Shown in pieces: positions 5,154 through 20,133 of a stretch of DNA of 64,000 nucleotides. The position numbers and the translations under genes were made by a program. Position 1 is the stretch's first letter, and each line of letters opens with the position of its first letter. Where the stretch lies: positions 62,001 through 126,000 of IMG/VR virus record IMGVR_UViG_3300036770_007495. One strand, given 5' to 3'. The notes under the pieces were generated by a model. It ran no database searches and was not told the origin of the DNA. It was given only the letters and a program-made list of their open reading frames with translations.

Positions 5154-5163
5154 TTTTCAAAAT

Positions 5164-5237: not shown

Positions 5238-5246
5238 TTTTTTAAG

Positions 5247-5274
5247 TTGATAAAGACAAACAATACGCTATAAT
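5247..5274 (+). promoter_or_regulatory. sigma70-type promoter
   Basis: TTGATA-16 bp-TATAAT, 6 nt before ATG 5281. Confidence 0.6.
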
Positions 5275-5280
5275 AATAAC

Positions 5281-5469: not shown

Positions 5470-5481
5470 GCGTAGTAATTA

Positions 5482-5557
5482 GCCCGGTTAGCTCAGCGGT
5501 AGTAGCGCCTCCTTTACACGGAGATTGTCGGCGGTTCGATCCCGTCACCGGGTACCA
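5482..5557 (+). tRNA. tRNA-Val(TAC)
   Basis: canonical cloverleaf, ACCA. Confidence 0.95.
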
Positions 5558-5563
5558 GTTTAT

Positions 5564-5638
5564 GGGGCTCTAGTGCTAGCGGTAACACGTCGCCTTTGCA
5601 CGGCGAAGTTTGGGGTTCGACTCCCCAGAGCTCCACCA
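5564..5638 (+). tRNA. tRNA-Ala(TGC)
   Basis: G3:U70 pair; ACCA. Confidence 0.95.
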
Positions 5639-5647
5639 ATTTCTAAA

Positions 5648-5734
5648 TGATCGGCGTCTGAAATGTATAAAGCCGGATAACCCGCGGAGATTGGGTCGGA
5701 TGAGATTAATAATGACGAGTATACCCGGTCACCA
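5648..5734 (+). ncRNA. CCA-ending RNA with an acceptor-like stem but no cloverleaf
   Basis: tgatcgg/ccggtca+CCA; gtata/tatac. Confidence 0.45.
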
Positions 5735-5736
5735 AT

Positions 5737-5878
5737 TCCTCGGTAGTGTAATGGTGCAACGGTCAGCAGCGAAAGATCGGGTCTTCCTTAAGGGTCTGCA
5801 GCAAACAGACCAAACAGGCGAATCTTAGCGAATGTCTGCGGACAACAGGTGTTGGTTCGAATCCAACCTGAGGACACA
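5737..5878 (+). ncRNA. tRNA-shaped RNA with the anticodon arm replaced by a large domain
   Basis: tcctcgg/ctgagga; D-like tagtgtaatggtgcaac; perfect T arm gttgg-ttcgaat-ccaac. Confidence 0.6.
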
Positions 5879-5880
5879 TT

Positions 5881-6082
5881 TTGATAGCAAGGAAAGACGC
5901 AGTTCGCGGGTAATGAGAAAGCAATGAGTGGGGCCGGGTTGGTCAATGGGCTGCAAATGATTGCAACGTCTGCAGCGAGCACCAACTGGACGGAAGCATT
6001 GCAAAGTGTAGATTACAAATGGAGAATGGGCAAGGAGGCTGGGTCTACCAGCATTAACTCCCCGATACCTCACCAGCTATCA
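5881..6082 (+). ncRNA. ~200-nt structured RNA
   Basis: ttgatagc/gctatcaa closing; gcaatg/cattgc; gttggt/accaac; gctgca/tgcagc; gctgg/ccagc. Confidence 0.55.
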
Positions 6083-6086
6083 ATTT

Positions 6087-6225
6087 CAGAACATTCAATC
6101 AACCGCAACACAGAGGTCGATCTTGCAAGCCGAGTACCTCTGACGGCTCTGATAACAGGTGCGCTTGCACAAGCCTTGCGAATGGTTCTGCATGCACCAG
6201 CTGAATTAGCTACTCAGTGTGGTGC
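6087..6225 (+). ncRNA. structured RNA
   Basis: cagaac/gttctg; cagaggt/acctctg; gcacca/tggtgc. Confidence 0.45.
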
Positions 6226-6237
6226 TAAATTTTCTAT

Positions 6238-6312
6238 GGACGTTGAGCCAGCTGGCGTGGGCGGAAGTCTGCAAAACTTCTTAGGTGGGTTCGATTCTCA
6301 CAACGTCCTCCA
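6238..6312 (+). tRNA. tRNA-Cys(GCA)
   Basis: gaagt-ctGCAaa-acttc; U73; CCA. Confidence 0.9.
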
Positions 6313-6337
6313 ATTCTAGTACGCGTATCCGGCGCGA

Positions 6338-6404
6338 GGCTCGTCGCTGGTTAATTCTAGACACCTGGTCTTCCAACGTCGCAGGTGAAGTTAACGAGCC
6401 GCCA
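6338..6404 (+). ncRNA. T-armless tRNA-like RNA
   Basis: ggctcgt/acgagcc+GCCA; ctgg/ctag; cacctg/caggtg. Confidence 0.5.
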
Positions 6405-6408
6405 ATTT

Positions 6409-6837
6409 ATGAAAACAAAAATGCTGATATTTGGTTTGCCGGGATCCGGCAAAACCACTCTTGCAAAAAAGTTAGTTGGTGCAGTTGCTGACTCTATGCA
6501 CATCAATGCTGATGCAGTTAGAAGTGCAGTTGATGATTGGGATTTTTCGCAACAAGGCCGCATTCAACAAGCACATAGAATGCATCAATTGAGTGAAGCA
6601 AGCAATGCTGCTCTTGTAGTTTGTGACTTTGTCTGTCCTTACCAAAGCACAAGAGATGCATTGTTCAATGATTACTTTCAAGTGTTCATGGATACCATCA
6701 AGAGCAGCAGATTTGCTGATACAGATGCAATTTTTGAACATGTCAATTATTGTGATTTTCGAATTACAAATTTTGACCAAACAGAAATTTTTATCAAATT
6801 CATTGTTGATTTAGTTGTAAAACCATCCATTGTATAA
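6409..6837 (+). CDS. adenylylsulfate kinase-like P-loop kinase
   Basis: GLPGSGKTT, NADAVR, WDFS..GR, DFVCP. Confidence 0.75.
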   Translation: MKTKMLIFGLPGSGKTTLAKKLVGAVADSMHINADAVRSAVDDWDFSQQGRIQQAHRMHQLSEASNAALVVCDFVCPYQSTRDALFNDYFQVFMDTIKSSRFADTDAIFEHVNYCDFRITNFDQTEIFIKFIVDLVVKPSIV

Positions 6838-6856
6838 GAGTAAATAAACAACAAAA

Positions 6857-6939
6857 GCCCCGGTAGCGGATCCGCCTTCTAAGCGGAGCATTGTACCGTA
6901 ATTGGACGCATACAGGTTCGAGTCCTGTTCGGGGTACCA
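6857..6939 (+). tRNA. tRNA-Arg(TCT), D-arm-rewired
   Basis: gccccgg/tcggggt+ACCA; tccgc-ctTCTaa-gcgga; gcgg 6866-69 pairs ccgt 6896-99 followed by AATTGGA. Confidence 0.8.
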
Positions 6940-6950
6940 CTTTTCAAAAA

Positions 6951-7027
6951 TCCCTGCGTATCATAATTAGCTAATGTCCTCGCCTGTGAAGCGAGCTAAG
7001 ACGGGGCAGAACCGTCCCAGGGAACCA
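6951..7027 (+). tRNA. tRNA-His(GTG) lacking G-1:C73
   Basis: ctcgc-ctGTGaa-gcgag; ACCA. Confidence 0.75.
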
Positions 7028-7030
7028 TTT

Positions 7031-7215
7031 CCGGAATAGTTGCAAACGAGGGTTCGAAACCTCAAATAGCATCTAACAGAGATTCAAAGCATCGAAGTTT
7101 ATAGGTTGAACGGGACCCTGACAGGTTGATGGTGTGTTCGAGTGCACACGTGCTTTGAGTCTCGATAATTTATCTGGCTGTTGCAATGAGGTAAAGACCC
7201 AACGCAATGCCAAAT
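7031..7215 (+). ncRNA. structured RNA with T-loop-like hairpins
   Basis: gagattcaaagca/tgctttgagtctc; gagg-gttcgaaa-cctc; gtgtg-ttcgagtg-cacac. Confidence 0.45.
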
Positions 7216-7369
7216 AGTCCAAAAAGTAAAAGTAAAATATTCATAGGGGCTGCGTTCTCAAAACTATGGCAAAGATTTTGCTATAGCAATGAAAATAACA
7301 GCAATGCATGAAATTCCAAAAAACATGTGGATTATTTCATAGAAGTTCATATAGTTATTTAGTCAAAAT

Positions 7370-7457
7370 GCTGGTGTGGCTGAGCGGTCTAAAGCACTTG
7401 CCTTGTAAGCAAGCGGGAGTGATCCCATCGTCAGTTCGAATCTGACCACCAGCTCCA
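7370..7457 (+). tRNA. tRNA-Thr(TGT) with long variable arm
   Basis: cttgc-ctTGTaa-gcaag; V arm ggga-gtga-tccc. Confidence 0.85.
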
Positions 7458-7463
7458 TTTTCC

Positions 7464-7742
7464 ATGAACAATCGTAGATCATTCTTCAAAAGCCTCATTG
7501 GCTTGATCGTTGCACCAAAGGTTGCTGAAGCTCTACCAACAGAAGCTCCAATACCATCAATTCCTGTATATGCTCCAATGAGGAGATTAAGGGCTAATTG
7601 GTCAATTGAAGTGGAGCAAGATCTTATGCGTATGCATGGCATAGACCTTGATGCAATGCTATTAACAAATATGTCAAAAGCAATTCAGGAAGAAATTGAT
7701 AATGACATGGTAAAAAAATTAACAAAGAAAATGGGGAGTTAG
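7464..7742 (+). CDS. Tat-like signal fused to a major-capsid-protein fragment
   Basis: NRRSFFK; C-terminal half aligns to gp23 of this window. Confidence 0.75.
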   Translation: MNNRRSFFKSLIGLIVAPKVAEALPTEAPIPSIPVYAPMRRLRANWSIEVEQDLMRMHGIDLDAMLLTNMSKAIQEEIDNDMVKKLTKKMGS

Positions 7743-7806
7743 TATAGAAGCAGTACATTGGCTCGACACGCCAAAGAAGAAGGAGCGTTACCTTCACTCC
7801 CTACCA
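7733..7806 (+). tRNA. tRNA-Val(GAC)
   Basis: ttggc-tcGACac-gccaa; ACCA. Confidence 0.8.
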
Positions 7807-7807
7807 T

Positions 7808-7882
7808 GGTTCCTAAGCATAGATAGCGATGCACACGATTGGTATTTGTGATAGAGGAGTGCAAATCTCCTAGGAACCTCCA
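7808..7882 (+). tRNA. tRNA-Thr(GGT)
   Basis: cacga-ttGGTat-ttgtg; TCCA. Confidence 0.8.
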
Positions 7883-7924
7883 CTCATCGCAGACAACACA
7901 TAAAATGCATGTATGTGAAGCAAC

Positions 7925-8011
7925 TAATAAAAAAACAATGTAGTTGCAAATAGCGAAGTTGAGATTAAAATAATGCACAAGAGCAAGATAAAGCTCAATG
8001 ATCTTTGAAAA
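7925..8011 (+). promoter_or_regulatory. rRNA-like promoter plus boxA-like antiterminator
   Basis: A-tract, TTGCAA-16 bp-TAAAAT, TGATCTTTGAAAA at 7999-8011. Confidence 0.55.
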
Positions 8012-8014
8012 ATT

Positions 8015-8420
8015 CCGTGGTGGCAGAACAATGGGTCGCCAGCCCATAATGCACTAAGCAACGTCTGAAAAGACGCCAGGTAGGTTGAAGAAGTTGTGCC
8101 GGATAAAGCTGAAATAGCCAAGGTTGGCTAACCTTGAGTGACGTAAGAAGACAACAAATCGCAATAATCTTGCTGATGGCTGTATTGTCTTGGAGATAAC
8201 CATTCCTCCCTATCATTAACAGTGAGAGTAATTAACTCATTGGATAGTGGCTGAATAATCCGACACAATGGAGGCTTGTGAGTAGTCAGGAATCTCACCC
8301 ACACTAATTTTGGCTAACGAATTCTGTATGCCACCTCCCGTAACCAATGGAAAAATTACAGAATGCGTTTGTGGGAGTCGCAGAAACCTTCAGTAATTTT
8401 CAACAATCTCGCAAGAGGAT
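8015..8420 (+). ncRNA. large ornate ncRNA candidate (GOLLD/ROOL-class)
   Basis: many complementary segments incl. ggtggca/tgccacc, ttgtgccggat/atccgacacaa, cccaca/tgtggg, attctgta/tacagaat; no credible ORF. Confidence 0.6.
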
Positions 8421-8441
8421 AAAAAGGAAACACACATACAC

Positions 8442-8657
8442 ATGAATAAAAACGCATATGAAATTCGCTTGGAAGTTCTTGGAATGGCTCATGGCACCGT
8501 CTGGAGCCTGTACCATGAAAAGCTCAATGCAATGAGAATCAATGCTGATAAAGCAAATCAGTTCTTTGATGAGACATTGGTTGACAAGCTTGCGCCTAGC
8601 GCAAAGGACGTTTTGTCTTATGCTGCTGAACTCTATGAGTTCGTAGAAGGCAAATAA
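8442..8657 (+). CDS. small hypothetical phage protein
   Basis: AAGGA upstream; MNKNAYEIRLEVL..A...LYEFV pattern typical of T4-like phages. Confidence 0.75.
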   Translation: MNKNAYEIRLEVLGMAHGTVWSLYHEKLNAMRINADKANQFFDETLVDKLAPSAKDVLSYAAELYEFVEGK

Positions 8658-8705
8658 AGTCAAAGTGGTGCTGGATAACCACATTAAACACCAGCTATTT
8701 TCAAT

Positions 8706-8801
8706 GCTCCAGTAGCTCAATTGGTAGAGCGGAAGGCTTATACCCTTCGTATGCACCAGATTAGTGCGCGGTTGTCGGTTCGAGCCCGGCCTGGAGTACC
8801 A
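8706..8801 (+). tRNA. tRNA-Ile(TAT) with long variable arm
   Basis: gaagg-ctTATac-ccttc; canonical D and T arms; ACCA. Confidence 0.85.
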
Positions 8802-8809
8802 TTTTACAT

Positions 8810-9265
8810 ATGAGATTTGAAGGAAAAAAAGTGATTGTTGCAAGTGGATATTTTGACCCACTGCACATTGGTCATGTTGAATATCTCAAACTAGCAAGAA
8901 TGCTGGGTGATATGCTGGTAGTCATTGTCAACAATGACAAGCAAGCTGCTCTCAAAAAAGGAAAATCATTCATGTCTGAAAATGACAGATGGCGCCTTGT
9001 GGGTGAACTCAAATGTGTGGATATTCCAGTTCTCTCCATTGACGATGGTGCATCTGTATCTGATACAATTCAAATGCTTGTAGACAAAGGTTTCAATCCT
9101 GCCATCTTTGCCAAAGGTGGTGATAGATTCAGCAATGAAATACCTGAAGCACAGGTGTGCAGAGAGCATGGTATTCAAATCGTGGATGGTCTTGGAGACA
9201 AGATTAGATCATCATCAGAATTAGTTTCCAACGCATATGAAAGTAGATTACAAATTTGTCCCTAA
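8810..9265 (+). CDS. cytidylyltransferase-family protein (TagD/RfaE-II-like)
   Basis: SGYFDPLHIGH; KGGDR; SSS. Confidence 0.85.
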   Translation: MRFEGKKVIVASGYFDPLHIGHVEYLKLARMLGDMLVVIVNNDKQAALKKGKSFMSENDRWRLVGELKCVDIPVLSIDDGASVSDTIQMLVDKGFNPAIFAKGGDRFSNEIPEAQVCREHGIQIVDGLGDKIRSSSELVSNAYESRLQICP

Positions 9266-9590
9266 AGGATGGGGGTTTGAAAAGTGGATTTGCAACAATG
9301 AAAAATATTGCGGCAAATTGCTCTTCATTGCCAAAGATAAGAAGATTTCTTGGCATTATCACAAACTCAAGGATGAACATTTTTACATCAACAAAGGTTC
9401 AGTAATAGTCCTTTATGGTGACAATAAAAATATCAATTTAGCTACATCTGAAATTCTGAAGCAAGGTGATGTATTTCATGTTCCAGTTGGAATGATTCAC
9501 AGATTAATTGCTTTAGAAGATACAGAGGTATTTGAATTTTCGACTCAACATTTTGACGAAGATTCTATCAGAGTGGAAAAAGGTGATTGA
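9237..9590 (+). CDS. cupin-domain protein (sugar isomerase-like)
   Basis: KGWG.E.W, SWHYHKLKDE, G..HR, EFST. Confidence 0.8.
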   Translation: MKVDYKFVPKGWGFEKWICNNEKYCGKLLFIAKDKKISWHYHKLKDEHFYINKGSVIVLYGDNKNINLATSEILKQGDVFHVPVGMIHRLIALEDTEVFEFSTQHFDEDSIRVEKGD

Positions 9591-9592
9591 AT

Positions 9593-9668
9593 GGCCAAGT
9601 GACGGAATGGCATACGTATCGGTCTCAAAAACCGAGTTCTGTGGGTTCGACTCCCACCTTGGCTACCA
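9593..9668 (+). tRNA. tRNA-Leu(CAA), short variable loop
   Basis: tcggt-ctCAAaa-accga; ACCA. Confidence 0.85.
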
Positions 9669-9679
9669 TAAATATACAG

Positions 9680-10063
9680 ATGAACTTTACTGCACTGTAT
9701 GAGCAAAAAATGTACGCTTTGATTTTTGAAAAAAACTATGGAACAATTCCTAATCCTCCAATTGATGTAGTACTCTCAAAAAGGGCAACAAAAGATCTAA
9801 AAAAAGATCCTATGCTTCGTGCCAATTTCATTAAACGAATGAAGAATTGGGAAAATTTACGCCGTGATCGTGTGTGGGAAAAATTAGCTGCATCATCACG
9901 TTTAAATGACAAATTCAACTTGCCCAGAAACATTACAGCTGTTGCTTTGGATTTGGGTGGAGCACATTGGTATAGAGCCATTGGATACATTGATGACAAC
10001 AATGTGTATCAGATTTTCTCCATCATGACGCACGAAGCATTCAATAAAATAGCTGTATCATGA
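9680..10063 (+). CDS. HigB/RelE-like toxin-fold protein
   Basis: C-terminus LDLGGAHWYRAI...IFSIMTHEAFNK resembles HigB pattern IGG.KYRLI...IGTH.EYDK. Confidence 0.55.
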   Translation: MNFTALYEQKMYALIFEKNYGTIPNPPIDVVLSKRATKDLKKDPMLRANFIKRMKNWENLRRDRVWEKLAASSRLNDKFNLPRNITAVALDLGGAHWYRAIGYIDDNNVYQIFSIMTHEAFNKIAVS

Positions 10064-10100
10064 TTTTTTTACAGCATTATGTTATCCGAGAAAATAAATA

Positions 10101-10436
10101 ATGCCAATGAACGACCACAAGAATTTAATCACTGAATTTCTTAGCGGAGGATGGATCATTTTGATCATTGGAGCATCTGGAATGGGTGCAAGAATTCTGT
10201 GCAGTGGTGTTCGTCATTCTGCATTAGAGATCGTTAAAAAAATAATTGCAGCAGCTCTTTGCTCTGGCATTGCTTGGTATGTGTTGGAGCAGACTGATTT
10301 AGCAAGTCTCACCAAAGCAATTGTTTACGGTGTAGTTGGTGTTGTAAGCCCTGAACTCATCAATGGTCTCATCAAGATTGGTGCAAAATTTGCCAAGAAC
10401 CCAACCAAATTCTTCGACGACAACAAGAGCAATTGA
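10101..10436 (+). CDS. holin-like membrane protein
   Basis: 111 aa, three hydrophobic segments, charged C-tail. Confidence 0.55.
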   Translation: MPMNDHKNLITEFLSGGWIILIIGASGMGARILCSGVRHSALEIVKKIIAAALCSGIAWYVLEQTDLASLTKAIVYGVVGVVSPELINGLIKIGAKFAKNPTKFFDDNKSN

Positions 10437-10464
10437 AATTTCATGATTTGCATTAAATAAATGC

Positions 10465-11721
10465 ATGAATCGTAGAGAATTTCTTCGAGTTGGTGCTGCA
10501 GCAGGCATTTCTTTGCCAACAATGTTGCGCAGTCAAGATGCTACCAAAGTCAAAGCAGCATCAGTAATCCAAATCTTCTTGCCTGGTGGCATTGCACATC
10601 AGGATGCATGGGATTACAAACCATATGGATCACCAGAGTATCGTGGTCCATTTGCAGGCATCAAGACCAAAATTGATGGAGTTCACTTTGGTGCATTGTT
10701 GCAAAACACTGCTAAAATCAGCGACAACTTGACTGTGATTCGTTCCATGACACATGGTGAAGCAGCCCACGAACGAGGTGTGCACAACATGTTGACTGGC
10801 TACAGACCTTCACCTGCTTTGACATATCCATCATTTGGAACGGTCATCAATCACGAGTTGGGCGGCAGAAACAACTTGCCTGCATATGTGCTTGTGCCAA
10901 ATCAATTTGCTCCTGAGAATGGCACGGGATATCTATCAACACGTTACGGACCATTTGCAGTGGGGGCAAACCCAGAAGATCCTTCATTCTCCGTAAAGGA
11001 TCTCAAGTCACCTGCAGGAGTAACAGATCAGGCATTTGAACGTCGCAGAGCTCTTCTTGGTGTTGTTGATGACCATTTCAAAACCAGAGAATCACATGTG
11101 GATGCAGTCAAAGCCATGGATTCATTTTATAATGATGCATACAGCATGGTATCATCAACCCAAGCACGAGAAGCATTTGAATTGAGCAAAGAAACTGATG
11201 CAATGCGTGATGCATATGGCAGAAATGCTGCAGGCCAGCGCATGTTGCTGGCTCGCCGATTGGTAGAAGCAGGTGTTCGCATGGTCACTGTCACATATGG
11301 CAGCTGGGATCATCACAGCAATCTCAAAGGTGCGTTTGAGAGCAACATGATGAACTTTGATAAAGCATATGCCATGCTCATTACTGACTTGAAGCAAAGA
11401 GGCTTACTTGATTCTACACTGGTGATGATTACATCAGAATTTGGTCGCACACCAAAGATTAATGGAACCAATGGCCGCGATCACTGGCCTCGTGTGTTTT
11501 CCACTGTGCTTGCTGGGGGTGGAACCAAGGCTGGTTTTGCATATGGAACCAGCGATGCACTTGCTGCGGAACCGGAAACAGATCCTGTTTCGCCTGGTCA
11601 ATTGGCTGCAACCATGTACCATCTCATGGGCATTGATCCAAGAAAGAAGCTCATGACTCCTGATTTAAGACCAGTTGAAATTGTGTATGAAGAAGATCCT
11701 ATTGAAAAGATCTTGGCTTAA
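10465..11721 (+). CDS. DUF1501 protein with Tat signal
   Basis: NRREFL; IFLPGG..HQD.WD.KP; WDHH; SEFGRTPKIN..GRDHWP. Confidence 0.9.
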   Translation: MNRREFLRVGAAAGISLPTMLRSQDATKVKAASVIQIFLPGGIAHQDAWDYKPYGSPEYRGPFAGIKTKIDGVHFGALLQNTAKISDNLTVIRSMTHGEAAHERGVHNMLTGYRPSPALTYPSFGTVINHELGGRNNLPAYVLVPNQFAPENGTGYLSTRYGPFAVGANPEDPSFSVKDLKSPAGVTDQAFERRRALLGVVDDHFKTRESHVDAVKAMDSFYNDAYSMVSSTQAREAFELSKETDAMRDAYGRNAAGQRMLLARRLVEAGVRMVTVTYGSWDHHSNLKGAFESNMMNFDKAYAMLITDLKQRGLLDSTLVMITSEFGRTPKINGTNGRDHWPRVFSTVLAGGGTKAGFAYGTSDALAAEPETDPVSPGQLAATMYHLMGIDPRKKLMTPDLRPVEIVYEEDPIEKILA

Positions 11722-12044
11722 ACACCCTGGTTGGAGTAAGAGAAGAACTGCGATCTAAAAGAAAGCAAACCAGCACCTGCTGTAGTTTTTGCACTAACCT
11801 GAGAGCTGTTTGTTAATCCGCGAAATGTAAACTCTTCATTTGCAGACAACAAGAATGCATTGGTTGTATCAAAATTGTTCTGATCAAAAATGAGTACACC
11901 TTGACCTGTTGTGTTTTTAACAACGACTTCTGAACATACTTGAAATGGCAACTGCTTGAGATTGGTATCGAGAGCAACATTGAATGATTTGCATACATTC
12001 AGGTTGTAGTATGTTACTCCATTGTTTGTTGTGGGTGCTGGCAT
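11718..12044 (-). CDS. small beta-rich late protein
   Basis: TAAATA 5 nt upstream; 108-aa ORF. Confidence 0.65.
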   Translation of the reverse strand: MPAPTTNNGVTYYNLNVCKSFNVALDTNLKQLPFQVCSEVVVKNTTGQGVLIFDQNNFDTTNAFLLSANEEFTFRGLTNSSQVSAKTTAGAGLLSFRSQFFSYSNQGV

Positions 12045-12072
12045 AAGGTTATTTAGTCTGCTAAATACAATT

Positions 12073-12840
12073 ATGAGCTTTACCAGTCTATTTAATGATC
12101 TTCTTTTGGAAAAGAAAGTACTTACAAGAACAGAAATTCAGCAAGATCTGGAAAAGTTCATGGATCATCTCAAAACAAAAAACAATGTTTTGTTTGTAAC
12201 CACCAGCAACAGATGGGCTGGATCAGAGCAAAAAGCTAAATCTACACAATTGGCTTATCACATCAAAGATTCATTAACTGAATGCAACGTCAAAGTCATT
12301 GAAGCAGATAAACTCAACATCAGATGCTGCACAGGCAATGTGAGTTTGGCATCTGGCAACATTTGTGGTGCAAAAGATGCTTTGCTCAAAAGTTCATCAA
12401 AAAATCCAACCGGTCAAATCAGATGCTGGGAAGCCAAACACAGAGATGATGAGTTGTATAAAATTGCAAATGAAGTGTTCAAAGCTGATGCAGTTGTATT
12501 CTTTACAAGTGTAAGGTGGGGCCAAACCAACTCCATCTATCAAAAAGTGATTGAACGACTAACCTGGATAGAAAACAGATGGTCCTGTTTGGGTGAAAGC
12601 AATTTGCTTGAAAACAAAGAAGCAGGCATCATTGTCATTGGACAAAATTGGAAAGACAAGCAAGTTATGCAAACTCAGCGCAGTGTTTTTGAGATGTTTG
12701 GATTCAAATCACCTGCAAATCTCTCCATGTATTGGCAGTTTACTGATGATGCAATGGATGAATCCAAGCAGTCATACAAGGCAGCAGTTTCTCAGTTCCA
12801 AGATGACTTTGATTTAAGACTCCGCAAAAAGACTAAATAA
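12073..12840 (+). CDS. flavodoxin-like / NADPH-dependent FMN reductase family
   Basis: TSNR, C..C cluster, ADAVVFFTSVRWG, IERL. Confidence 0.7.
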   Translation: MSFTSLFNDLLLEKKVLTRTEIQQDLEKFMDHLKTKNNVLFVTTSNRWAGSEQKAKSTQLAYHIKDSLTECNVKVIEADKLNIRCCTGNVSLASGNICGAKDALLKSSSKNPTGQIRCWEAKHRDDELYKIANEVFKADAVVFFTSVRWGQTNSIYQKVIERLTWIENRWSCLGESNLLENKEAGIIVIGQNWKDKQVMQTQRSVFEMFGFKSPANLSMYWQFTDDAMDESKQSYKAAVSQFQDDFDLRLRKKTK

Positions 12841-12845
12841 ATTTT

Positions 12846-14633
12846 ATGAAAAAGCTAATTGTCCTATTTTTGAGCATTTGCACCTTAACTTTTGGTGCAA
12901 CATTAGAACAGCTTAACAACTACAGCGGCTGGATTGACTCAGTTTTAGAAAAGCAATACACTGCTGCCAAGGTAACGCCACTCAAGCGCATTGATGAAGA
13001 TACATTTGTGCGCAGAGCATATCTCACCATCATTGGCAGAAATCCAACATACGAAGAATATCAGATGTATGCCAAAGCAACTGATGCCAACAAGCGCCAA
13101 GGTTTGATTCAATTTTTAATGAATCATCCTGGACACGTTTCACACATGTTTAACTTTTGGGCTGAGTCTTTGAGACTAAGAGACAGATTATCCAACATCA
13201 ATAATTTTTCTGGTGGTCCATACATTGATTACATCAAAGACTCCATTGCTGCAAACAAACCATATACAAAGTTTGTTTCAGATTTGTTGACTGCATCAGG
13301 TTCATATTACGACAATCCTGCTACAGGCTATTTCTATCGCGATTTGGGAATGCCTTTGGACAACCTCATTGCAACTGGCAAAGTTTTCATGGGCACTGAC
13401 ATTGGATGTGCACAATGCCATGATGATCCATTCCAAGATTTCACTCAAATGCAGTTTTATAAAATGGCTGCTATGTTTAATCAAGTAGAGCTCAGGGGCC
13501 GCGGCAAAGATAAAGATCCAGCCATTGCAGCTCGTCAAAAGGCTCTAAGAGAAGAAGTAGATGCCTTGATCAAAGCTGATCCAATGAAGAATCGTGGTCT
13601 CAACAATCAGATCAACAACTTTGTTGCAGCCATGAGAGCCAATCTTGAGGTAGAGGAGAAAAGAGAATTAAAATTGCCTCACGATTATAAGTATACAGAT
13701 GCAAAGCCACTTGATACAGTTGTACCTGCAGTATTGTCAGGCAAAACAGAAATCAAGAACAAAGCTGATATGAGACAGGATGTTGTTGCATGGTTGGTGA
13801 GCCCACAGCATCCAACATTCACAAAGAACATTGTCAATAGATACTGGAAATGGGTGTTTGGTAGATACATCATTGATGACTATGACAATATTCATGATGA
13901 TGAAAAGCTCAATGGTGAGCTCATGAATGCACTTGCTAAAATCATGGTGCAGGTAAATTATGATAGCAAGCAGTTCATGTATGTGTTATTCAATACCAAG
14001 CTCTTTCAAAGAGAATTGTATGATGGAGCATACTCTAATACAGAAAGATTCATCTTCATTGGGCCTGTCAAGCAGCGTCTAACAGCCGAACAAATGTGGG
14101 ATTCAGTTGTATCCATTGCCATTGATCGCCCAGATACATTCAAGCTCAGCTTTCAAGATGAGTATGTCAAGGTGATGAGATACACCATTGAAGATCTTAC
14201 CATTGACAAACTCAAAGAAAAACAAGAAATGTATCAGAAGATTATGCGCTCCAAATACGATGCTGCTCCCAAGTATCGCAATTATCCACTTGCAAGAGCA
14301 TCTGAAGTGAATGACAACAGCCCTGTTAACACAATTCTTGAGCAGCTTGGCAGAGGCGACCGTGAGCTCATTGATACATCATCACGTGAAGGTTCTGTAA
14401 CACAAGTAATTTCATTCATGAATGGACAACTTGCTGAAGTTGCAGTAAACAAAGATACCAGCCTTGCAAAAGCCATTGCTGGCAAGTCTCCAACTGAGAC
14501 CATTGAAATTATTTTCAAGTCTGTTTTATCCAGAAAACCCACAATTGATGAGAGAAGCAAGTTCACTGGAGTGCAGGATGATGACATCATCTGGGCACTA
14601 GTCAATAGTTCTGAGTTCAAATTTAATAAATAA
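12846..14633 (+). CDS. DUF1549/DUF1553 protein with signal peptide and CxxCH
   Basis: D.TFVRRAYL.IIGR.PT; FMG..IGCAQCHD.PF; NIVNRYW; RLTAEQMWDS; WALVNSSEF. Confidence 0.9.
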   Translation: MKKLIVLFLSICTLTFGATLEQLNNYSGWIDSVLEKQYTAAKVTPLKRIDEDTFVRRAYLTIIGRNPTYEEYQMYAKATDANKRQGLIQFLMNHPGHVSHMFNFWAESLRLRDRLSNINNFSGGPYIDYIKDSIAANKPYTKFVSDLLTASGSYYDNPATGYFYRDLGMPLDNLIATGKVFMGTDIGCAQCHDDPFQDFTQMQFYKMAAMFNQVELRGRGKDKDPAIAARQKALREEVDALIKADPMKNRGLNNQINNFVAAMRANLEVEEKRELKLPHDYKYTDAKPLDTVVPAVLSGKTEIKNKADMRQDVVAWLVSPQHPTFTKNIVNRYWKWVFGRYIIDDYDNIHDDEKLNGELMNALAKIMVQVNYDSKQFMYVLFNTKLFQRELYDGAYSNTERFIFIGPVKQRLTAEQMWDSVVSIAIDRPDTFKLSFQDEYVKVMRYTIEDLTIDKLKEKQEMYQKIMRSKYDAAPKYRNYPLARASEVNDNSPVNTILEQLGRGDRELIDTSSREGSVTQVISFMNGQLAEVAVNKDTSLAKAIAGKSPTETIEIIFKSVLSRKPTIDERSKFTGVQDDDIIWALVNSSEFKFNK

Positions 14634-14637
14634 CAAC

Positions 14638-15873
14638 ATGAATACACTAACAAGACGCAACTTTGTGCTTAACCTTGCATCAGCAGGTTTAGGTGTAACC
14701 GTTCTTCCACACATTGTAGCTGCTCCAGCCAGCAAGAAAGCAGAACACATCATCTACCTCTTTATGAATGGAGGCATGAGCCATTTGGATACATTTGATC
14801 CTAAAATGGATGCTGAAGTCAAAGGTGAATTCAAATCCATCACCACAAATGCTGATTTTCAGATCTCTGAACATTTGCCTTTGATGGCCAAGCATGGTGA
14901 TAAGATGGCAGTTGTTCGTTCCATGATGGTAACAACTGGCGATCATGCTGGTGCACAATACTTGCAAAGAACATCATTCAAGAAGATTGGCACAGTTGTT
15001 CACCCCAACATGGGAGCATGGATGTGTCATTATACTGAAGATGGGAAGCCAAAAGTCATTCCACAAAACGTTTTGATTGGTGGTGGAGCTGATCACCCCG
15101 GTTCAGGGTGGATGCCTAAGAAGTATTCTCCTATTCCAGTTGCAGATCCTATGAGAGGTCTTGATAATACTAAGCTTAAGAATGCAGCAGAGTTTGCAAA
15201 GAGAGTACAAATCCTGGAAAAACTTGAAAAAGATGCAAACAAAATCATCAACCCAGCTCAAAAGTCATATGCTGAATTTTATGACCAAACAATTCGTCTT
15301 CTCAACTCAAATGAGCTTGATGTCTTTGATCTTTCCAAGGTGGATCAAGCAACAAGAGACAAATATGGCAACAATCGTTTTGGTCAAGGTGTTTGCTTGG
15401 CAAAACGCTTGATTGAAAAGGGTAATTGCAAGTTTATTGAAGTATCTGATGGTGGTTGGGATACACACGTTAATAACTTTGAATCTCTTGAGACAAAGCT
15501 CAAGGTGCTTGACCAAGCAGTTGATGCTCTTTTGCAAGACCTCAAATCATCTGGTCTTCTTGAGAAAACACTTGTTGTAATTGCAACAGACTTTGGTAGA
15601 ACACCAAACATCAACATCAACAATGGTAGAGATCATCACCCAGGTGCATTCTGCGGTGTTCTCATGGGTGCAGGCATCAAAGGCGGTCAAGCATATGGCA
15701 AGTCTGATGACAAGGGTATGAAAGCAATTGAAAACGTGGTTAGCCCAGCTGATTTCAATGCTACCATTGCTGCTGCTGCAGGATTGCCAATTGAAGATAT
15801 TGTAGTCTCACCTGATGGTAGACCATTCAAAATTGCTGATAAAGGAAAGCCTGTTACTGCTCTGCTTGCGTGA
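14638..15873 (+). CDS. DUF1501 protein with Tat signal (paralog 2)
   Basis: TRRNFV; GGMSHLDTFDPK; GWDTH; FGRTP..N..GRDHHP. Confidence 0.9.
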   Translation: MNTLTRRNFVLNLASAGLGVTVLPHIVAAPASKKAEHIIYLFMNGGMSHLDTFDPKMDAEVKGEFKSITTNADFQISEHLPLMAKHGDKMAVVRSMMVTTGDHAGAQYLQRTSFKKIGTVVHPNMGAWMCHYTEDGKPKVIPQNVLIGGGADHPGSGWMPKKYSPIPVADPMRGLDNTKLKNAAEFAKRVQILEKLEKDANKIINPAQKSYAEFYDQTIRLLNSNELDVFDLSKVDQATRDKYGNNRFGQGVCLAKRLIEKGNCKFIEVSDGGWDTHVNNFESLETKLKVLDQAVDALLQDLKSSGLLEKTLVVIATDFGRTPNININNGRDHHPGAFCGVLMGAGIKGGQAYGKSDDKGMKAIENVVSPADFNATIAAAAGLPIEDIVVSPDGRPFKIADKGKPVTALLA

Positions 15874-15891
15874 TCACGCATAAATAAGTTC

Positions 15892-17043
15892 ATGCAGAAC
15901 CAGGCTTTTCACTTTGAGATTGAAGATCTCATTACGCAATTCATTGCGGCATTTGATGATTGCGTAATCAAGAGGTTCACTGGTTCTCGTGAACAAAAAG
16001 ACCAAATCAGTGTGCGTTATGTTTATGCACCCAAGCAGCGTGTAATTTATGATATCATTAACAAAGGCAAGAATATAACATTGCCGGTTGTGAGCATCAG
16101 CATTTCGCAAATTGCAAGAGATTCATCCAGAGTGTTCAACAAGCTTGATGGATTTTATTATCCTGCTGCTAACACCGACAATGAATATGCTGCTTTTTCT
16201 AATCAGGTTTATTCACCGGTTCCTGTCAACATAACTGTCAACATGAGCATCATTGGCAAGTATCAGACAGACATTGAACAAATCTTATCCAATTTTGCCG
16301 CATATACAAATCCATATTTGGTCATAAGCTGGAAAATTCCTGCGGCTTATAATCTCACAAAGACATATGAGATTAGAACTGAAGTCGATTGGAGCGGATC
16401 CATTGCACTCAATTATCCTGGTGATCAGACACCAGCAGATTCTTACAGAGTAACTGCTGATACAAGCTTTACAATCAAAGGGTGGCTGTTTCCACAAGCA
16501 CCATCAAGTTCTGTTAAAAACATCTTTTTCATTGATGCTAATTTTTATGCAACAAATCAGTTGTCAGGCAATCCCTACAAGATGCTTTATTCCACTCTGG
16601 AAGACTATGCAACACTGAGTGCATCCAATTTGGCAGGCTTTACCGAGACCATTAACATATCTGCAGCACCAGCAATTACTAACATTTATTATGCAACCAA
16701 TGTTGGCATTGGTGAGCAAGTGTTCTCCAGTCTCACCATCAATGCATTCAATTCTGGTGGAACCATAACATTGTTTGGTAAAAGATTTCAATACACTACA
16801 GCAGTTGCACTTTGCAGCAACAATGCAACTCTTTACAAAGGTCTCACATCATTTGCATTTGCGTATTATCCAACTATTTCATGCATACCCATTGAAACAT
16901 ACAATGTTTTGAATGAAAACACAATGACCATCACATTGCCTGCTTTGACTGCATCAGGCAACTTTAACATTGTAGTACTCAATGAGGCAGGCTATGACAC
17001 AACATACAGCGCTAATCAAGGTGTTTTTACCAATGTGGTGTAG
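15892..17043 (+). CDS. gp15: tail sheath stabiliser/terminator with C-terminal extension
   Basis: FIAAFDD..IKR, V.Y.YAPKQ, LP..S, PVPVNI, QIL, FTIKGWLF. Confidence 0.75.
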   Translation: MQNQAFHFEIEDLITQFIAAFDDCVIKRFTGSREQKDQISVRYVYAPKQRVIYDIINKGKNITLPVVSISISQIARDSSRVFNKLDGFYYPAANTDNEYAAFSNQVYSPVPVNITVNMSIIGKYQTDIEQILSNFAAYTNPYLVISWKIPAAYNLTKTYEIRTEVDWSGSIALNYPGDQTPADSYRVTADTSFTIKGWLFPQAPSSSVKNIFFIDANFYATNQLSGNPYKMLYSTLEDYATLSASNLAGFTETINISAAPAITNIYYATNVGIGEQVFSSLTINAFNSGGTITLFGKRFQYTTAVALCSNNATLYKGLTSFAFAYYPTISCIPIETYNVLNENTMTITLPALTASGNFNIVVLNEAGYDTTYSANQGVFTNVV

Positions 17044-17074
17044 CTGTTTAAGCAATGACAACTAAATAACTAGA

Positions 17075-18874
17075 ATGGACTCTTCTTATAGCAATCAGGC
17101 AAATGTGCAGCAAACTTTTGGTAGGCAGTTGATGACCTACATTTCTTCCAAGCTGCCATACTCTGGATTCAACATTTTGGATTTCACAGAAAGAGAAAAT
17201 CCAAAATTCAAGACATTTGAGGAGACAGGCATCCGCAGAAATGAAGCACTAGCAAGAAACTCCATTTCACAATCCAACCTTTTCTCTACAGGGTATGGTG
17301 AGTTTCGTGACATTGGATTTGGTGATCTCATGTATGCAAACATGCAGAACGACAAAGGTGCACGTTTGCAGGATTACAGAGTCATGGCTGCTTTTGCAGA
17401 AGTATCCAATGCTCTTGATGAAATTTGTGATGAGATGATCAACAGAGATGCACAGAATCATGTTGTGAATGTGAAGCTCAAAAACTTTACAATGGATGCT
17501 GTGGATCTAGAACAGCTGCAGCTTGAGTTTCAGAAGTACGTTGAGTTCTTTGATTTGGAAAACAAAGGCTGGACATATTTTAGAGATTTGTTGGTTGAAG
17601 GTGAGTTGTATTTTGAACACATCATTCACAAAAAGTATTCTGATCAAGGCGTTTTGGGTGTAATTAGAATGCCTACTGAACTTGTTGATCCTGTTTACAA
17701 CAACATTCAAAACATGATTGTCAAAGGTTATCTTTACAGAAAGCCTGTTTTTGATGCTGTCAATCCCAAAAAGAAAATTGAAGAGAAGATGATTCCAATG
17801 CAAGAGAATCAGGTTGTTTACATCAACAGCGGTATTTGGAATCAAAACAAAACAGTGCGCCTGCCTTTCATTGAAAATGCTCGTCGTGCTTATCGTCAAT
17901 TGTCACTCATTGAAGATGCCATTGTCATTTACCGATTGGTGCGTGCACCAGAGCGTCTCATCTTCAACGTTGATGTTGGCAACATGGCACCACCCAAAGC
18001 AGAAGCATTTTTGCGCAAGCTCATGAATCAATACTGGAGCAGCAAAACATTTGATGTAGATCAGAATGATGTTGTTCGCAAGTTTAATCCTCAAAGCATG
18101 CTAGACAGCTTTTGGTTTGCCAAGCGTCAAGGTTCAGAAGGCACAAGCGTACAACAGCTGCCAGGTGGCCAAAATCTTGGTGAGTTGACAGACTTGATGT
18201 ACTTTGTCAAGAAATTGTATGAGGCACTCAAAGTGCCTGTCAACCGTTTGGATCCCCAATCACAGATTTCAGATGGCAGCACAGTATTGCGTGAAGAATT
18301 AAAGTTTGCTCGCTTCATCATCAGAATGCAACAGATGTTTGCATCTGGCATCAAAAAGGGCTTCATTACACATTTGCACCTCAAAGGACTTTGGGACAAA
18401 TGGAAGCTCAAAGATTATTACCTTGATGTAGAATTCAACCCACCGACCAACTATTATGAATTGCGCCAGAGTCAGCGATTGGAAGCCAAGGTGGGCAACT
18501 TCAACAATCTTGCATCCAATCCAACCATTTCTCAAACTTACTTGCAGCGTAAAATTCTTGGCTGGAGTGACATTGATGTCAAGGCTAATAGAGAGTACTT
18601 GCGTGCTGACAAGGAGCTTGAATGGGAGCTCAATCAAATCACCAACTCAGGCCCATATTGGAAGCTCATGATGGGTGGTGCGGTAGGTGGTGCAGAAGCT
18701 GGCGGCGCACCTCCAGGAGGAGGCGGCGGTGGTGGAGCTGGTCCAGGTGGAATGCCACCAGCATTTGCAGGAGGCCCTGCAGCACTTGAGACACCACCAG
18801 AAGCAGAAGCTCCACCTGAAGCTGGTGCACCAGAAGCTGCACAAGCTGCCCCTGCACCTGAAGCAGGCGCATAA
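17075..18874 (+). CDS. gp20: portal protein
   Basis: QLSLIEDAIVIYRLVRAPERLIFNVDVGNM..KAE; LPGGQNLGE; REELKF. Confidence 0.95.
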   Translation: MDSSYSNQANVQQTFGRQLMTYISSKLPYSGFNILDFTERENPKFKTFEETGIRRNEALARNSISQSNLFSTGYGEFRDIGFGDLMYANMQNDKGARLQDYRVMAAFAEVSNALDEICDEMINRDAQNHVVNVKLKNFTMDAVDLEQLQLEFQKYVEFFDLENKGWTYFRDLLVEGELYFEHIIHKKYSDQGVLGVIRMPTELVDPVYNNIQNMIVKGYLYRKPVFDAVNPKKKIEEKMIPMQENQVVYINSGIWNQNKTVRLPFIENARRAYRQLSLIEDAIVIYRLVRAPERLIFNVDVGNMAPPKAEAFLRKLMNQYWSSKTFDVDQNDVVRKFNPQSMLDSFWFAKRQGSEGTSVQQLPGGQNLGELTDLMYFVKKLYEALKVPVNRLDPQSQISDGSTVLREELKFARFIIRMQQMFASGIKKGFITHLHLKGLWDKWKLKDYYLDVEFNPPTNYYELRQSQRLEAKVGNFNNLASNPTISQTYLQRKILGWSDIDVKANREYLRADKELEWELNQITNSGPYWKLMMGGAVGGAEAGGAPPGGGGGGGAGPGGMPPAFAGGPAALETPPEAEAPPEAGAPEAAQAAPAPEAGA

Positions 18875-20060: not shown

Positions 20061-20133
20061 TAAAAATGTACAAAAATATGTGTATTGCTGCACATAAAAC
20101 ATAGATTTTAATCAAGCTTACATAAATACGAAT

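What the first reader, a model, noticed from the sequence alone, without database searches (positions are those of the whole stretch)
10465..15873. Phage-encoded PVC periplasmic module: DUF1501 x2 + DUF1549/DUF1553 (CxxCH) + flavoprotein
Seen: two Tat-signal DUF1501 paralogues and a signal-peptide DUF1549/1553 protein in the usual gene order, in phage-like nucleotide style, each with a late-promoter motif, between a holin-like gene and gp15. Established: these families are greatly expanded in Planctomycetota/Verrucomicrobiota and functionally uncharacterised. Inference: identifies the host group and points to a long-resident auxiliary system acting in the periplasm late in infection (envelope remodelling, lysis, exclusion or redox). 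A minimal copy is a handle on the family's function.
Basis: partly seen in the sequence, partly recalled or inferred. Interest (0 to 1): 0.8.

Follow-up and report, generated by a model that had tools for sequence, protein, structure and literature searches.

The report
Phage-borne PVC periplasmic enzyme trio
A large T4-like freshwater phage carries working, exported copies of three proteins (two DUF1501 enzymes and one DUF1549/DUF1553 partner) otherwise typical of Planctomycetota and Verrucomicrobiota; many related uncultured phages keep the same genes, which points to the host group and gives a small, tractable version of a very large protein family of unknown function.

Summary
Window 10465-15873 encodes two DUF1501 proteins with twin-arginine leaders and one PSCyt2(DUF1549)/PSD1(DUF1553) protein with a Sec leader and an invariant CAQCHDDPF motif. 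It also holds a flavodoxin-like gene and an overlooked opposite-strand gene. The region lies between a holin-like gene and gp15/portal of a T4-like phage.

It is not a chimera. Independent assemblies reproduce the junctions. The best cellular copy among 185,579 species genomes is 62% identical. GC3 matches the phage, and dN/dS is 0.03-0.08.

The two DUF1501 genes are not recent duplicates (33% identity). The first is an orthologue of the enzyme of the PVC-wide four-gene cluster. The second, with its upstream partner, copies the cellular two-gene pair. At least five T4-like lineages, freshwater and marine, carry these genes at different genomic positions, and 22 phage copies of the first gene form one clade.

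DUF1501 models as an alkaline-phosphatase-superfamily fold without the sulfatase signature. The partner's fold matches nothing solved.

The flavoprotein is variable, cytoplasmic and not part of the unit. Function stays inferred: most likely an exported metalloenzyme/partner system acting on periplasmic or envelope esters. Nothing like it is in INPHARED, PHROGs or the searched literature.

The parts
10101..10436 (+). 111-aa membrane protein with three hydrophobic segments and a charged C-terminus; holin-like neighbour of the block, found only in the window's own lineage
   Evidence: Translation. The Atlas feature and structure hits fall on holin superfamily III clusters (score 0.92-0.93, TM 0.70-0.75). 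There is no Pfam or PHROG hit. It is conserved upstream of DUF1501-a in L002, L004, L005 and L016-L018.
10465..11721 (+). DUF1501-a, 418 aa, with a twin-arginine leader (RREFLR, nt 10471-10488). It is an orthologue of the DUF1501 member of the PVC four-gene cluster.
   Evidence: Pfam E 9.7e-111. The best cellular relatives are 52-62% identical, and each sits upstream of PPC, PSCyt1/Big_2/PSCyt2/PSD1 and PSCyt1/WD40 genes. The AF2 model has pLDDT 83, and Foldseek places it with sulfatases and LtaS. dN/dS is 0.08.
11718..12044 (-).
   Evidence: Conserved in L002 (97%), L004/L005 (81%), L016-L018 (72%) and L003 (54%). dN/dS is 0.05. Atlas clusters are 100% viral with jelly-roll/cupin-like models. 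It has its own TAAATAA motif at 12049-12055.
12073..12840 (+). 255-aa flavodoxin-fold, FMN-reductase-like protein with no signal peptide; a variable passenger rather than a core part
   Evidence: Pfam FMN_red 23 bits against a cut-off of 24. PDB 5mji at E 0.08. Atlas places it in virus-dominated FMN_red-like clusters. It is present only in L001, L002, L004 and L005.
12846..14633 (+). PSCyt2(DUF1549)/PSD1(DUF1553) protein, 595 aa, with a Sec-type leader; the helical partner of DUF1501-b
   Evidence: Pfam. More than 120 phage-type clusters are 41-96% identical. The AF2 model has pLDDT 86 and pTM 0.87, is all-alpha, and has no PDB or BFVD match. It lies directly upstream of a DUF1501 gene in every phage locus read and in the one cellular pair read.
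13407..13433 (+). CAQCHDDPF: the family-wide CxxCH signature, carrying a phage-clade His-to-Asp change
   Evidence: Invariant in alignment A2. All 148 representatives read carry C-x-x-C-H followed by D, E, N or Q. Of those, 119 of 148 read CAQCH[DN]HPF, whereas 117 of 120 phage-type proteins read CAQCHDDPF.
14638..15873 (+). DUF1501-b, 411 aa, with a twin-arginine leader (RRNFV, nt 14653-14667); the enzyme of the two-gene pair
   Evidence: Pfam E 5.9e-99. The nearest named cellular relatives are Planctomycetota at 46-48% identity. A Fuerstiella homologue sits directly after a 641-aa PSCyt2/PSD1 gene. dN/dS is 0.03.
10094..10100 (+). ATAAATA motif directly before the holin-like gene
10454..10462 (+). 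TAAATAAAT motif before DUF1501-a
12049..12068 (.). Divergent pair of motifs: TAAATAA on the minus strand for the 108-aa gene and CTAAATAC on the plus strand for the flavodoxin-like gene
12834..12842 (+). TAAATAAAT motif before the PSCyt2/PSD1 gene; it overlaps the stop codon of the preceding gene
14625..14633 (+). AATAAATAA motif before DUF1501-b
15892..18874 (+). gp15 tail-sheath stabiliser and gp20 portal: the phage flank that anchors the block in a T4-like structural module, preceded by the same motif (15880-15887, 17063-17069)
   Evidence: Pfam T4-gp15_tss at 2.5e-18 and Portal_T4 at 1.4e-97; motif

Best explanation
What it is (high confidence). This is a host-derived auxiliary gene set of a T4-like phage whose gene donors, and probably hosts, are PVC bacteria. 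It has three functional parts. (i) DUF1501-a is the catalytic member of the PVC-wide four-gene cluster, taken without its partners. (ii) and (iii) are a PSCyt2/PSD1 protein followed by DUF1501-b, a complete copy of the simple cellular two-gene pair.

How it most likely works (inferred). The genes are transcribed from T4-late-type TAAATA elements together with the virion genes. The two DUF1501 enzymes fold in the cytoplasm and cross the membrane by the host Tat pathway. The partner goes through Sec, and its only two cysteines (CxxCH) receive a haem c or a metal in the periplasm. DUF1501-b docks on the helical partner. DUF1501-a works alone or on the host's own PPC, PSCyt-PSD and WD40 partners.

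The DUF1501 proteins are metal-dependent enzymes of the alkaline-phosphatase superfamily, but they are not formylglycine sulfatases. I propose that they hydrolyse or transfer phospho- or sulfo-ester groups on a periplasmic or envelope-associated substrate. In that way they would top up or redirect a host periplasmic pathway that the phage needs while the host's own expression declines. This is the same logic as other phage auxiliary metabolic genes.
For: The family assignments are shown by Pfam scores far above the cut-offs. The leaders and the CxxCH motif can be read from the sequence. Phage residency is shown by three results: 24 IMG/VR loci with conserved synteny, an identical 59.7-kb Logan contig, and contigs from an independent lake sample that bridge the junction between the holin-like gene and DUF1501-a. 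No close cellular copy exists; the maximum is 62% identity in 185,579 species genomes. Module GC3 is 0.33-0.39, against a median of 0.65 in the cellular orthologues. dN/dS is 0.03-0.08, as low as for portal. The phage DUF1501-a copies form one clade with SH-aLRT support of 100 and 94.7. The two origins are shown by the cellular contexts: the four-gene cluster (described in PMC3542564) and the Fuerstiella pair. PSCyt2/PSD1 lies upstream of DUF1501 in all phage loci read (L105, L109-L114, groups A-C). The full trio recurs in a divergent phage, L114. The alkaline-phosphatase-superfamily fold is supported by Foldseek hits to sulfatases and LtaS (E 2.7e-7 to 1e-5) and by a profile hit to LtaS and sulfatases over residues 292-397. 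Polar residues invariant across both paralogues and the cellular copies are D50, K52, S94, H102, D282, H284, R328, T329, R338 and H340. The motif is shared with gp15, portal and protease. It is kept by the module genes in group B, where the neighbouring early genes instead carry TTGATA-N17-TATAAT. A 3.6-kb contig from a freshwater metatranscriptome library covers 10566-13894.
Against: No activity, substrate, cofactor or complex was tested, and both families are uncharacterised in any organism (PMC3542564, PMC5615132). Structural similarity to solved enzymes is only moderate (TM 0.40-0.44, about 12% identity). The SDHG metal motif of sulfatases reads SEFG here. The TAAATA element also precedes nrdB, so 'late' is not proven. 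RNA-library contigs may contain DNA. A natural variant, L004, has lost the pair but keeps DUF1501-a, so the pair is dispensable at least sometimes. The partner's fold matches no cytochrome, so haem binding is uncertain. The host has not been identified.
Confidence: 0.45

Rival explanations
1. Lysis or egress accessory. The exported enzymes attack an envelope component of the PVC host (outer-membrane lipid or glycan, periplasmic polymer) at the end of infection. They would work with the holin-like protein, or they would destroy receptors on debris so that progeny are not trapped.
For: The genes carry the same motif as late structural genes. DUF1501-a lies directly after a holin-like gene in the window's lineage. 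In the marine phage loci L109 and L110, the pair sits between an Amidase_2 gene and a Phage_lysozyme gene. The best profile hit is LtaS, an envelope-polymer transferase. No endolysin or spanin was recognised near the holin-like gene.
Against: In most lineages the genes sit among replication, nucleotide and NAD genes, with no lysis gene nearby. The cellular homologues are ordinary chromosomal genes present in many copies, which is not expected of lytic factors. DUF1501 is soluble and lacks the membrane domain of LtaS- and EptA-type enzymes.
Confidence: 0.17
2. Nutrient scavenging in the strict sense. The enzymes are periplasmic phosphatases or phosphodiesterases, or esterases releasing sulfate, that feed phage DNA synthesis in nutrient-poor lakes, like the pho-regulon genes of cyanophages.
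For: The fold belongs to the alkaline-phosphatase superfamily. Tat export is also used by the phosphatases PhoD and PhoX (my own knowledge). The phage occurs widely in freshwater samples. It has a 225-kb genome and so a high phosphorus demand.
Against: A late-type motif is poor timing for feeding replication. There is no Pho box and no link to phosphate genes in either the cellular or the phage contexts read. Pfam Phosphodiest and Sulfatase scores are below cut-off. The need for a CxxCH partner is not explained.
Confidence: 0.15
3. Redox or electron-transfer device. The CxxCH protein is a c-type cytochrome, and DUF1501 is its redox enzyme partner, as proposed for the cellular modules. The phage would use it to adjust periplasmic redox state or respiration.
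For: The CxxCH motif is invariant and provides the only cysteines of the mature protein. Cellular relatives often add a true PSCyt1 cytochrome domain. Electron transport is the proposal of PMC3542564.
Against: The phage protein lacks PSCyt1. Its confident model matches no cytochrome fold. DUF1501 has a hydrolase or transferase fold, not an oxidoreductase fold. The neighbouring flavoprotein is cytoplasmic and not conserved with the module.
Confidence: 0.1
4. Artefact or decaying passenger: an assembly chimera of phage and PVC DNA, or a recent neutral capture on its way to loss.
For: One variant (L004) has deleted the pair. The family is otherwise cellular.
Against: Independent assemblies and samples give the same junctions. 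The best cellular identity is 62%. Composition is fully phage-like. dN/dS is 0.03-0.08. The genes are retained across lineages whose portal proteins are only 63-89% identical.
Confidence: 0.02

Closest known systems
Cellular two-gene pair PSCyt2/PSD1 followed by DUF1501 in Planctomycetota and Verrucomicrobiota (Kamneva et al. 2012, PMC3542564; example L107, Fuerstiella sp.)
   Same: The domain content, gene order, size class (641 + 432 aa against 595 + 411 aa), Tat and Sec leaders and CAQCH signature are the same.
   Different: The copy is phage-borne. It is 36-48% identical to the nearest cellular copies. GC3 is ameliorated. A clade-specific His-to-Asp change lies next to the CxxCH. No PSCyt1 or carbohydrate-binding additions are present.
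PVC four-gene cluster: DUF1501 / PPC protein / PSCyt1-Big_2-PSCyt2-PSD1 / PSCyt1-WD40 (PMC3542564)
   Same: DUF1501-a is the orthologue of its first gene. It is 52-62% identical and colinear, and every cellular hit with enough flank shows the cluster.
   Different: The phage took only the enzyme. The PPC, PSCyt1-containing and WD40 partners are absent, and the N-terminal extension of the cellular proteins is missing.
Alkaline-phosphatase superfamily enzymes with solved structures (S1 sulfatases, LtaS, phosphonate monoester hydrolase)
   Same: The core fold is shared (Foldseek probability 1.0, E down to 2.7e-7). A helix-strand-loop segment is shared: TLVxxSEFGR against TLIxxSDHG.
   Different: Identity is about 12% and TM is only 0.40-0.44. 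There is no C/S-x-P-x-R signature, and DUF1501-a has no cysteine at all. Pfam Sulfatase and Phosphodiest scores are below cut-off.
Exported auxiliary genes of T4-like cyanophages (PstS, PhoA); comparison from my own knowledge, not tested here
   Same: These are host-derived genes in a T4-like genome whose products act in the host periplasm.
   Different: The family is different and of unknown function. The system has two or three components. The motif is late-type rather than an early or Pho-regulated promoter. The host group is different.
DUF1800-DUF1501 pairs of Proteobacteria and Actinobacteria (PMC5122149)
   Same: A Tat-exported DUF1501 is paired with a helical protein of unknown function in one operon.
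   Different: The partner family is different. Homology of DUF1800 to PSD1 was not tested here. That pair is not reported in phages.

Membership tests
Pfam DUF1501 (PF07394) | Full-length match to the family model above the gathering score | tested here: met
   371.1 and 332.3 bits against a cut-off of 27, covering profile positions 1-390 of 390
Pfam DUF1501 (PF07394) | Twin-arginine leader, common in the family | tested here: met
   RREFL and RRNFV are followed by hydrophobic stretches. R3 and R4 are conserved in at least 90% of 44 sequences. No Tat predictor was available.
PSCyt2/DUF1549 (PF07583) plus PSD1/DUF1553 (PF07587) | Both domains above the gathering score, in that order | tested here: met
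   124.3 bits (cut-off 29.8) and 94.7 bits (cut-off 28.5)
PSCyt2/DUF1549 | Conserved C-x-x-C-H signature | tested here: met
   CAQCH at residues 188-192 is invariant. All 148 family representatives read carry the motif.
c-type cytochrome | Covalently bound haem and a cytochrome c fold | tested here: inconclusive
   The motif and a Sec leader are present. The confident model matches no cytochrome fold (best PDB E 0.57). Haem attachment cannot be tested with these tools.
Formylglycine (S1) sulfatases | C/S-x-P/A-x-R signature near the N-terminus and a Pfam Sulfatase match | tested here: not met
   No such motif occurs at the expected place, and DUF1501-a has no cysteine. Pfam Sulfatase scores 17.8 bits against a cut-off of 25.
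Alkaline-phosphatase superfamily | Shared alpha/beta core fold with metal ligands after the core strands | tested here: inconclusive
   The fold match is significant but loose. WDHH, SEFGRT and GRDH follow core strands. Ligand geometry could not be checked.
Auxiliary metabolic gene of a phage | A host-derived gene inside a bona fide phage genome, kept by selection | tested here: met
   T4-like gp15, gp20, gp21 and gp23 flank the block. The phage copies form one clade. dN/dS is 0.03-0.08. Independent assemblies agree.
NADPH-dependent FMN reductase (PF03358), for ORF 12073-12840 | Match above the gathering score | tested here: inconclusive
   23.0 bits against a cut-off of 24. The nearest Atlas clusters are viral and 15-89% of their members carry FMN_red.
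Holin superfamily III, for ORF 10101-10436 | Small protein with 2-3 membrane segments and a charged C-terminus, matching a holin family | tested here: inconclusive
   The topology is visible in the sequence. Atlas neighbours are holin clusters. No Pfam or PHROG hit.
T4-type late promoter | TATAAATA-like element upstream of late genes that drives gp55-dependent transcription | tested here: inconclusive
   C[AT]TAAATA[AC] is enriched about 50-fold just upstream of start codons, including those of virion genes. It lies only 4-8 nt from the ATG and also precedes nrdB. No transcript ends were available.

The most novel reading that the evidence does not exclude
The trio marks a large, globally distributed and so far uncultured assemblage of T4-like phages of Planctomycetota and Verrucomicrobiota. 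It would be a stripped-down, self-sufficient version of the enigmatic PVC DUF1501/PSCyt-PSD machinery: a new kind of periplasmic metalloenzyme working with a novel-fold Cys2-His cofactor protein, needed for productive infection. Working out its chemistry in this minimal form would assign a function to a family with more than 12,000 clusters at 50% identity.
Probability: 0.3. Interest if true: 0.8.

Novelty: new member of a known kind. Interest (0 to 1): 0.6.

Why it matters
DUF1501 and PSCyt/PSD proteins are among the largest uncharacterised paralogue families of Planctomycetota and Verrucomicrobiota. My search found 12,441 clusters at 50% identity for the partner protein alone. They have had no assigned function since they were described (PMC3542564, PMC5615132).

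Phages keep only what pays. A minimal set under strong selection shows which components suffice: one enzyme plus one partner without any accessory domain, and one orphan enzyme. That gives compact targets for biochemistry.

The genes also offer a marker linking a widespread group of uncultured freshwater and marine T4-like phages to PVC bacteria, for which hardly any phages are known. They add a new exported class to the catalogue of phage auxiliary genes.

Tried and rejected
- **Cultured phages.** A search of 50,697 records found no DNA match, and the only protein match was a 33%-identical fragment in a gut contig.
- **Profile libraries.** PHROGs, NCBIfam and PADLOC had no family for any of the three proteins.
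- **Solved structures by sequence.** Single-sequence searches found nothing. Profile searches gave only weak hits to LtaS and sulfatases for DUF1501, and noise for the partner.
- **Fold search for the partner.** Neither PDB nor BFVD gave a significant match. There was only a faint sub-domain likeness to the phycobilisome-linker/DUF4214 domains.
- **Sulfatase reading.** Rejected, because the formylglycine signature is absent.
- **Flavoprotein as redox partner.** Rejected as a core part: it has no signal peptide, belongs to a general viral family and is not co-conserved.
- **Chimera or recent capture.** Rejected.
- **Donor phylum from the tree.** Not resolved. The phage clade as sister to Verrucomicrobiales gives p-AU 0.56, and as sister to Gemmataceae 0.68. 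A first test that rejected the Verrucomicrobiota grouping was confounded by one Chthoniobacteraceae row.
- **Sigma-70 promoter and terminator scans.** At chance level in the block.
- **Literature.** No paper in the searchable library links these families to phages. The single 'DUF1501 + phage' hit is a weak domain note on a 61-aa protein.
- **An error of mine.** I used a wrong frame for the flavoprotein, and corrected it from then on.


Full report
**1. What is in the sequence**

The stretch 10101-15873 holds six genes.
- 10101-10436 (+): a 111-aa membrane protein.
- 10465-11721 (+): a DUF1501 protein, called DUF1501-a here.
- 12073-12840 (+): a flavodoxin-like protein. The mechanical ORF starts at a TTG at 12022, but the sensible start is the ATG at 12073.
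- 12846-14633 (+): a PSCyt2(DUF1549)/PSD1(DUF1553) protein.
- 14638-15873 (+): a second DUF1501 protein, DUF1501-b.

Pfam confirms the families far above their cut-offs. The FMN_red match of the flavodoxin-like protein falls just below its cut-off.

The twin-arginine leaders (RREFL, RRNFV), the Sec-type leader and the CxxCH motif (CAQCHDDPF) can be read directly. The two cysteines of that motif are the only ones in the mature partner protein.

Downstream follow gp15, the gp20 portal, the prohead protease and the major head protein of a T4-like phage. The portal is only about 30% identical to cyanophage portals.

The window is part of the 224.7-kb IMG/VR contig 3300036770_007495.

**2. Phage-encoded, not a chimera**

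Twenty-four IMG/VR loci carry a relative of DUF1501-a.
- L002 comes from another metagenome. It is 96-98% identical in protein and has the same order from the holin-like gene through the gene after portal.
- Logan's independent assembly of the probable source run gives one 59.7-kb contig identical over 10040-16030.
- An unrelated lake sample gives contigs that bridge the junction between the holin-like gene and DUF1501-a.
- A 3.6-kb contig from a freshwater metatranscriptome library covers 10566-13894, although DNA carry-over cannot be excluded.

Among one genome for each of 185,579 species, the best cellular match is 62% identical.

The module's GC3 is 0.33-0.39, like gp15 and portal. The cellular orthologues have a median GC3 of 0.65.

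Against L002, dN/dS is 0.03-0.08 for every gene of the block, compared with 0.03 for portal.

**3. Two origins, not a duplication**

The two DUF1501 proteins are 33% identical.

*DUF1501-a.* Every cellular relative with enough flanking DNA shows the same arrangement. A PPC-domain protein and a PSCyt1/Big_2/PSCyt2/PSD1 protein follow on the same strand, and in the one locus read that far (L030) a PSCyt1/WD40 protein follows as well. This is the 'most complex four-gene cluster' of Kamneva et al. 2012 (PMC3542564). The phage carries the enzyme alone.

*DUF1501-b.* This gene is always preceded by the PSCyt2/PSD1 gene. Its nearest named relatives are Planctomycetota at 46-48% identity. A Fuerstiella homologue lies directly after a 641-aa PSCyt2/PSD1 gene in an ordinary chromosomal context. 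The nearest named cellular relative of the partner is a Verrucomicrobiales protein at about 38% identity.

**4. Spread among phages**

The genes occur in several arrangements.
- Group A (the window, L002, L003, L005, L016-L018): the block lies next to gp15 and portal.
- Group B (L006-L013): the pair lies on the other strand beside RNase H, and DUF1501-a is 5.6 kb away, amid gp32, gp41, UvsX, gp43 and QueC.
- Group C (L019, L021, L023, L024): gp44 lies between them.
- Further phage contexts include NAMPT/NUDIX, RNA ligase with RNR, DNA ligase, and a marine context with amidase and lysozyme. In L114 all three genes are again in tandem.

Twenty-two phage DUF1501-a copies form one clade on a stem of 0.5 substitutions per site. 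SH-aLRT support is 100, or 94.7 in a thinned data set.

The place of that clade within the PVC orthogroup is open. Sister to Verrucomicrobiales gives p-AU 0.56, and sister to Gemmataceae gives 0.68.

The partner protein has more than 120 phage-type clusters at 90% identity, spanning 41-96% identity to the window's copy.

One natural variant, L004, fuses the first 45 or so codons of the partner to the last 100 or so codons of DUF1501-b, while its close relative L005 is intact. The pair can therefore be lost, whereas DUF1501-a stays.

**5. Regulation**

A C[AT]TAAATA[AC] element lies 4-8 nt before the ATG of all six genes. It also precedes gp15, portal, the gene after portal, the protease and about ten other genes. 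Twenty of the 45 TAAATA sites in the window lie 0-12 nt before an ORF start, where about 0.4 are expected.

The element resembles the T4 late promoter TATAAATA (my own knowledge). One group C gene carries that exact octamer.

In group B the module genes keep TAAATAA, while the neighbouring early genes carry TTGATA-N17-TATAAT at the same short distance from the ATG. This argues that the element is a promoter and that transcripts have almost no leader. It also precedes nrdB, so late timing is likely but not shown.

**6. Structure**

DUF1501-a models with pLDDT 83. Its best PDB matches are S1 sulfatases and LtaS, with E from 2.7e-7 to 1e-5 and TM 0.40-0.44. A profile of 44 sequences finds LtaS and sulfatases over residues 292-397.

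The sulfatase signature is absent. A set of polar residues is invariant across both paralogues and the cellular copies: D50, K52, S94, H102, D282, H284, R328, T329, R338 and H340. This fits a metal-dependent active site.

The partner models confidently (pLDDT 86, pTM 0.87) as an all-helical protein. It has no significant match in PDB or BFVD.

Its CAQCH motif is present in all 148 family representatives read. The phage clade reads CHDD where cells read CH[DN]H.

**7. Interpretation**

Shown:
- the family membership;
- the export leaders;
- phage residency;
- the two cellular origins;
- long retention under selection;
- the motif shared with the virion genes.

Inferred:
- export by Tat and Sec;
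- a complex of the partner with DUF1501-b;
- a metal-dependent hydrolase or transferase reaction on phospho- or sulfo-esters in the periplasm or envelope;
- benefit to the phage by supplementing host systems.

The rivals are a lysis or egress aid, nutrient scavenging in the strict sense, and a redox device. None is excluded. The variable genomic neighbourhood speaks against a dedicated lysis role. The fold speaks against a purely redox role.

The flavodoxin-like gene and the 108-aa gene are typical viral genes that happen to lie inside the block in this lineage.

**8. Novelty**

The families and their cellular clusters are known but uncharacterised. I found no phage copy in INPHARED, no family in PHROGs and no relevant paper.

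This is a new member of the class of phage auxiliary genes, drawn from known families. Its value is as a host marker and as a minimal system for biochemistry.

Noticed in passing
window 309-9668: An array of 23 tRNA genes lies directly upstream of the block. The last one (tRNA-Leu, 9593-9668) overlaps the start of the mechanical ORF 9587-10063, which therefore probably starts later or is not a gene.
   Followed up: partly
window about 43500-57100, minus strand: A long low-GC (0.34-0.38) run of sugar-nucleotide and glycan genes: three epimerase/dehydratases, a C-methyltransferase, a GT10-like glycosyltransferase and many unassigned ORFs. It looks like a phage-borne surface-glycan or virion-glycosylation island.
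   Followed up: partly
window 8810-9590 and 6385-6837: A cytidylyltransferase-like gene (heptose-1-phosphate adenylyltransferase-like), a small cupin (named 'cysteine dioxygenase' in PHROGs, WbuC-like in NCBIfam) and a P-loop kinase with a weak APS-kinase match sit among the tRNAs.
   Followed up: partly
window 25523-27481: UvdE UV-damage endonuclease and QueF. Related phages carry QueC (L006) and PTPS (L105), which suggests 7-deazaguanine DNA modification in this phage group.
   Followed up: no
window-wide, e.g. 15880-15887, 17063-17069, 20122-20128, 34370-34376: The TAAATA element lies only 4-8 nt from start codons. In L006, sigma-70-like TTGATA-N17-TATAAT boxes sit equally close to early genes. 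Both imply leaderless or nearly leaderless mRNAs in these phages.
   Followed up: partly
L004 12381-12782: A deletion joins the signal-peptide end of the PSCyt2/PSD1 gene to the last quarter of DUF1501-b as one 133-aa ORF. The near-identical flanks in L005 carry both genes intact.
   Followed up: yes
window 13407-13433; proteins: There is a phage-clade-specific CAQCHDDPF, against CAQCH[DN]HPF in cells. The marine phage L109 keeps the cellular form.
   Followed up: partly
L022 10001-11275: This IMG/VR contig's DUF1501 (57% identity) groups with a Chthoniobacteraceae genome copy, not with the phage clade. It may be cellular DNA filed as viral, or a separate capture.
   Followed up: no
L109 and L110: Marine (Tara and JGI) phage-like contigs carry a 577-aa PSCyt2/PSD1 gene and a 400-aa DUF1501 gene between an Amidase_2 gene and a Phage_lysozyme gene, near a small beta-barrel outer-membrane-protein-like gene.
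   Followed up: partly
window vs L003: The auxiliary genes are more conserved than the neighbouring virion genes: DUF1501-a 90% and DUF1501-b 84% identity, against gp15 51% and portal 63%. This suggests exchange of the block between phages, or much tighter constraint on it.
   Followed up: no
runs: Near-identical sequence is present in subsurface, lake, aquaculture, lagoon, estuary and 'soil' metagenomes, and in two freshwater metatranscriptome libraries.
   Followed up: partly
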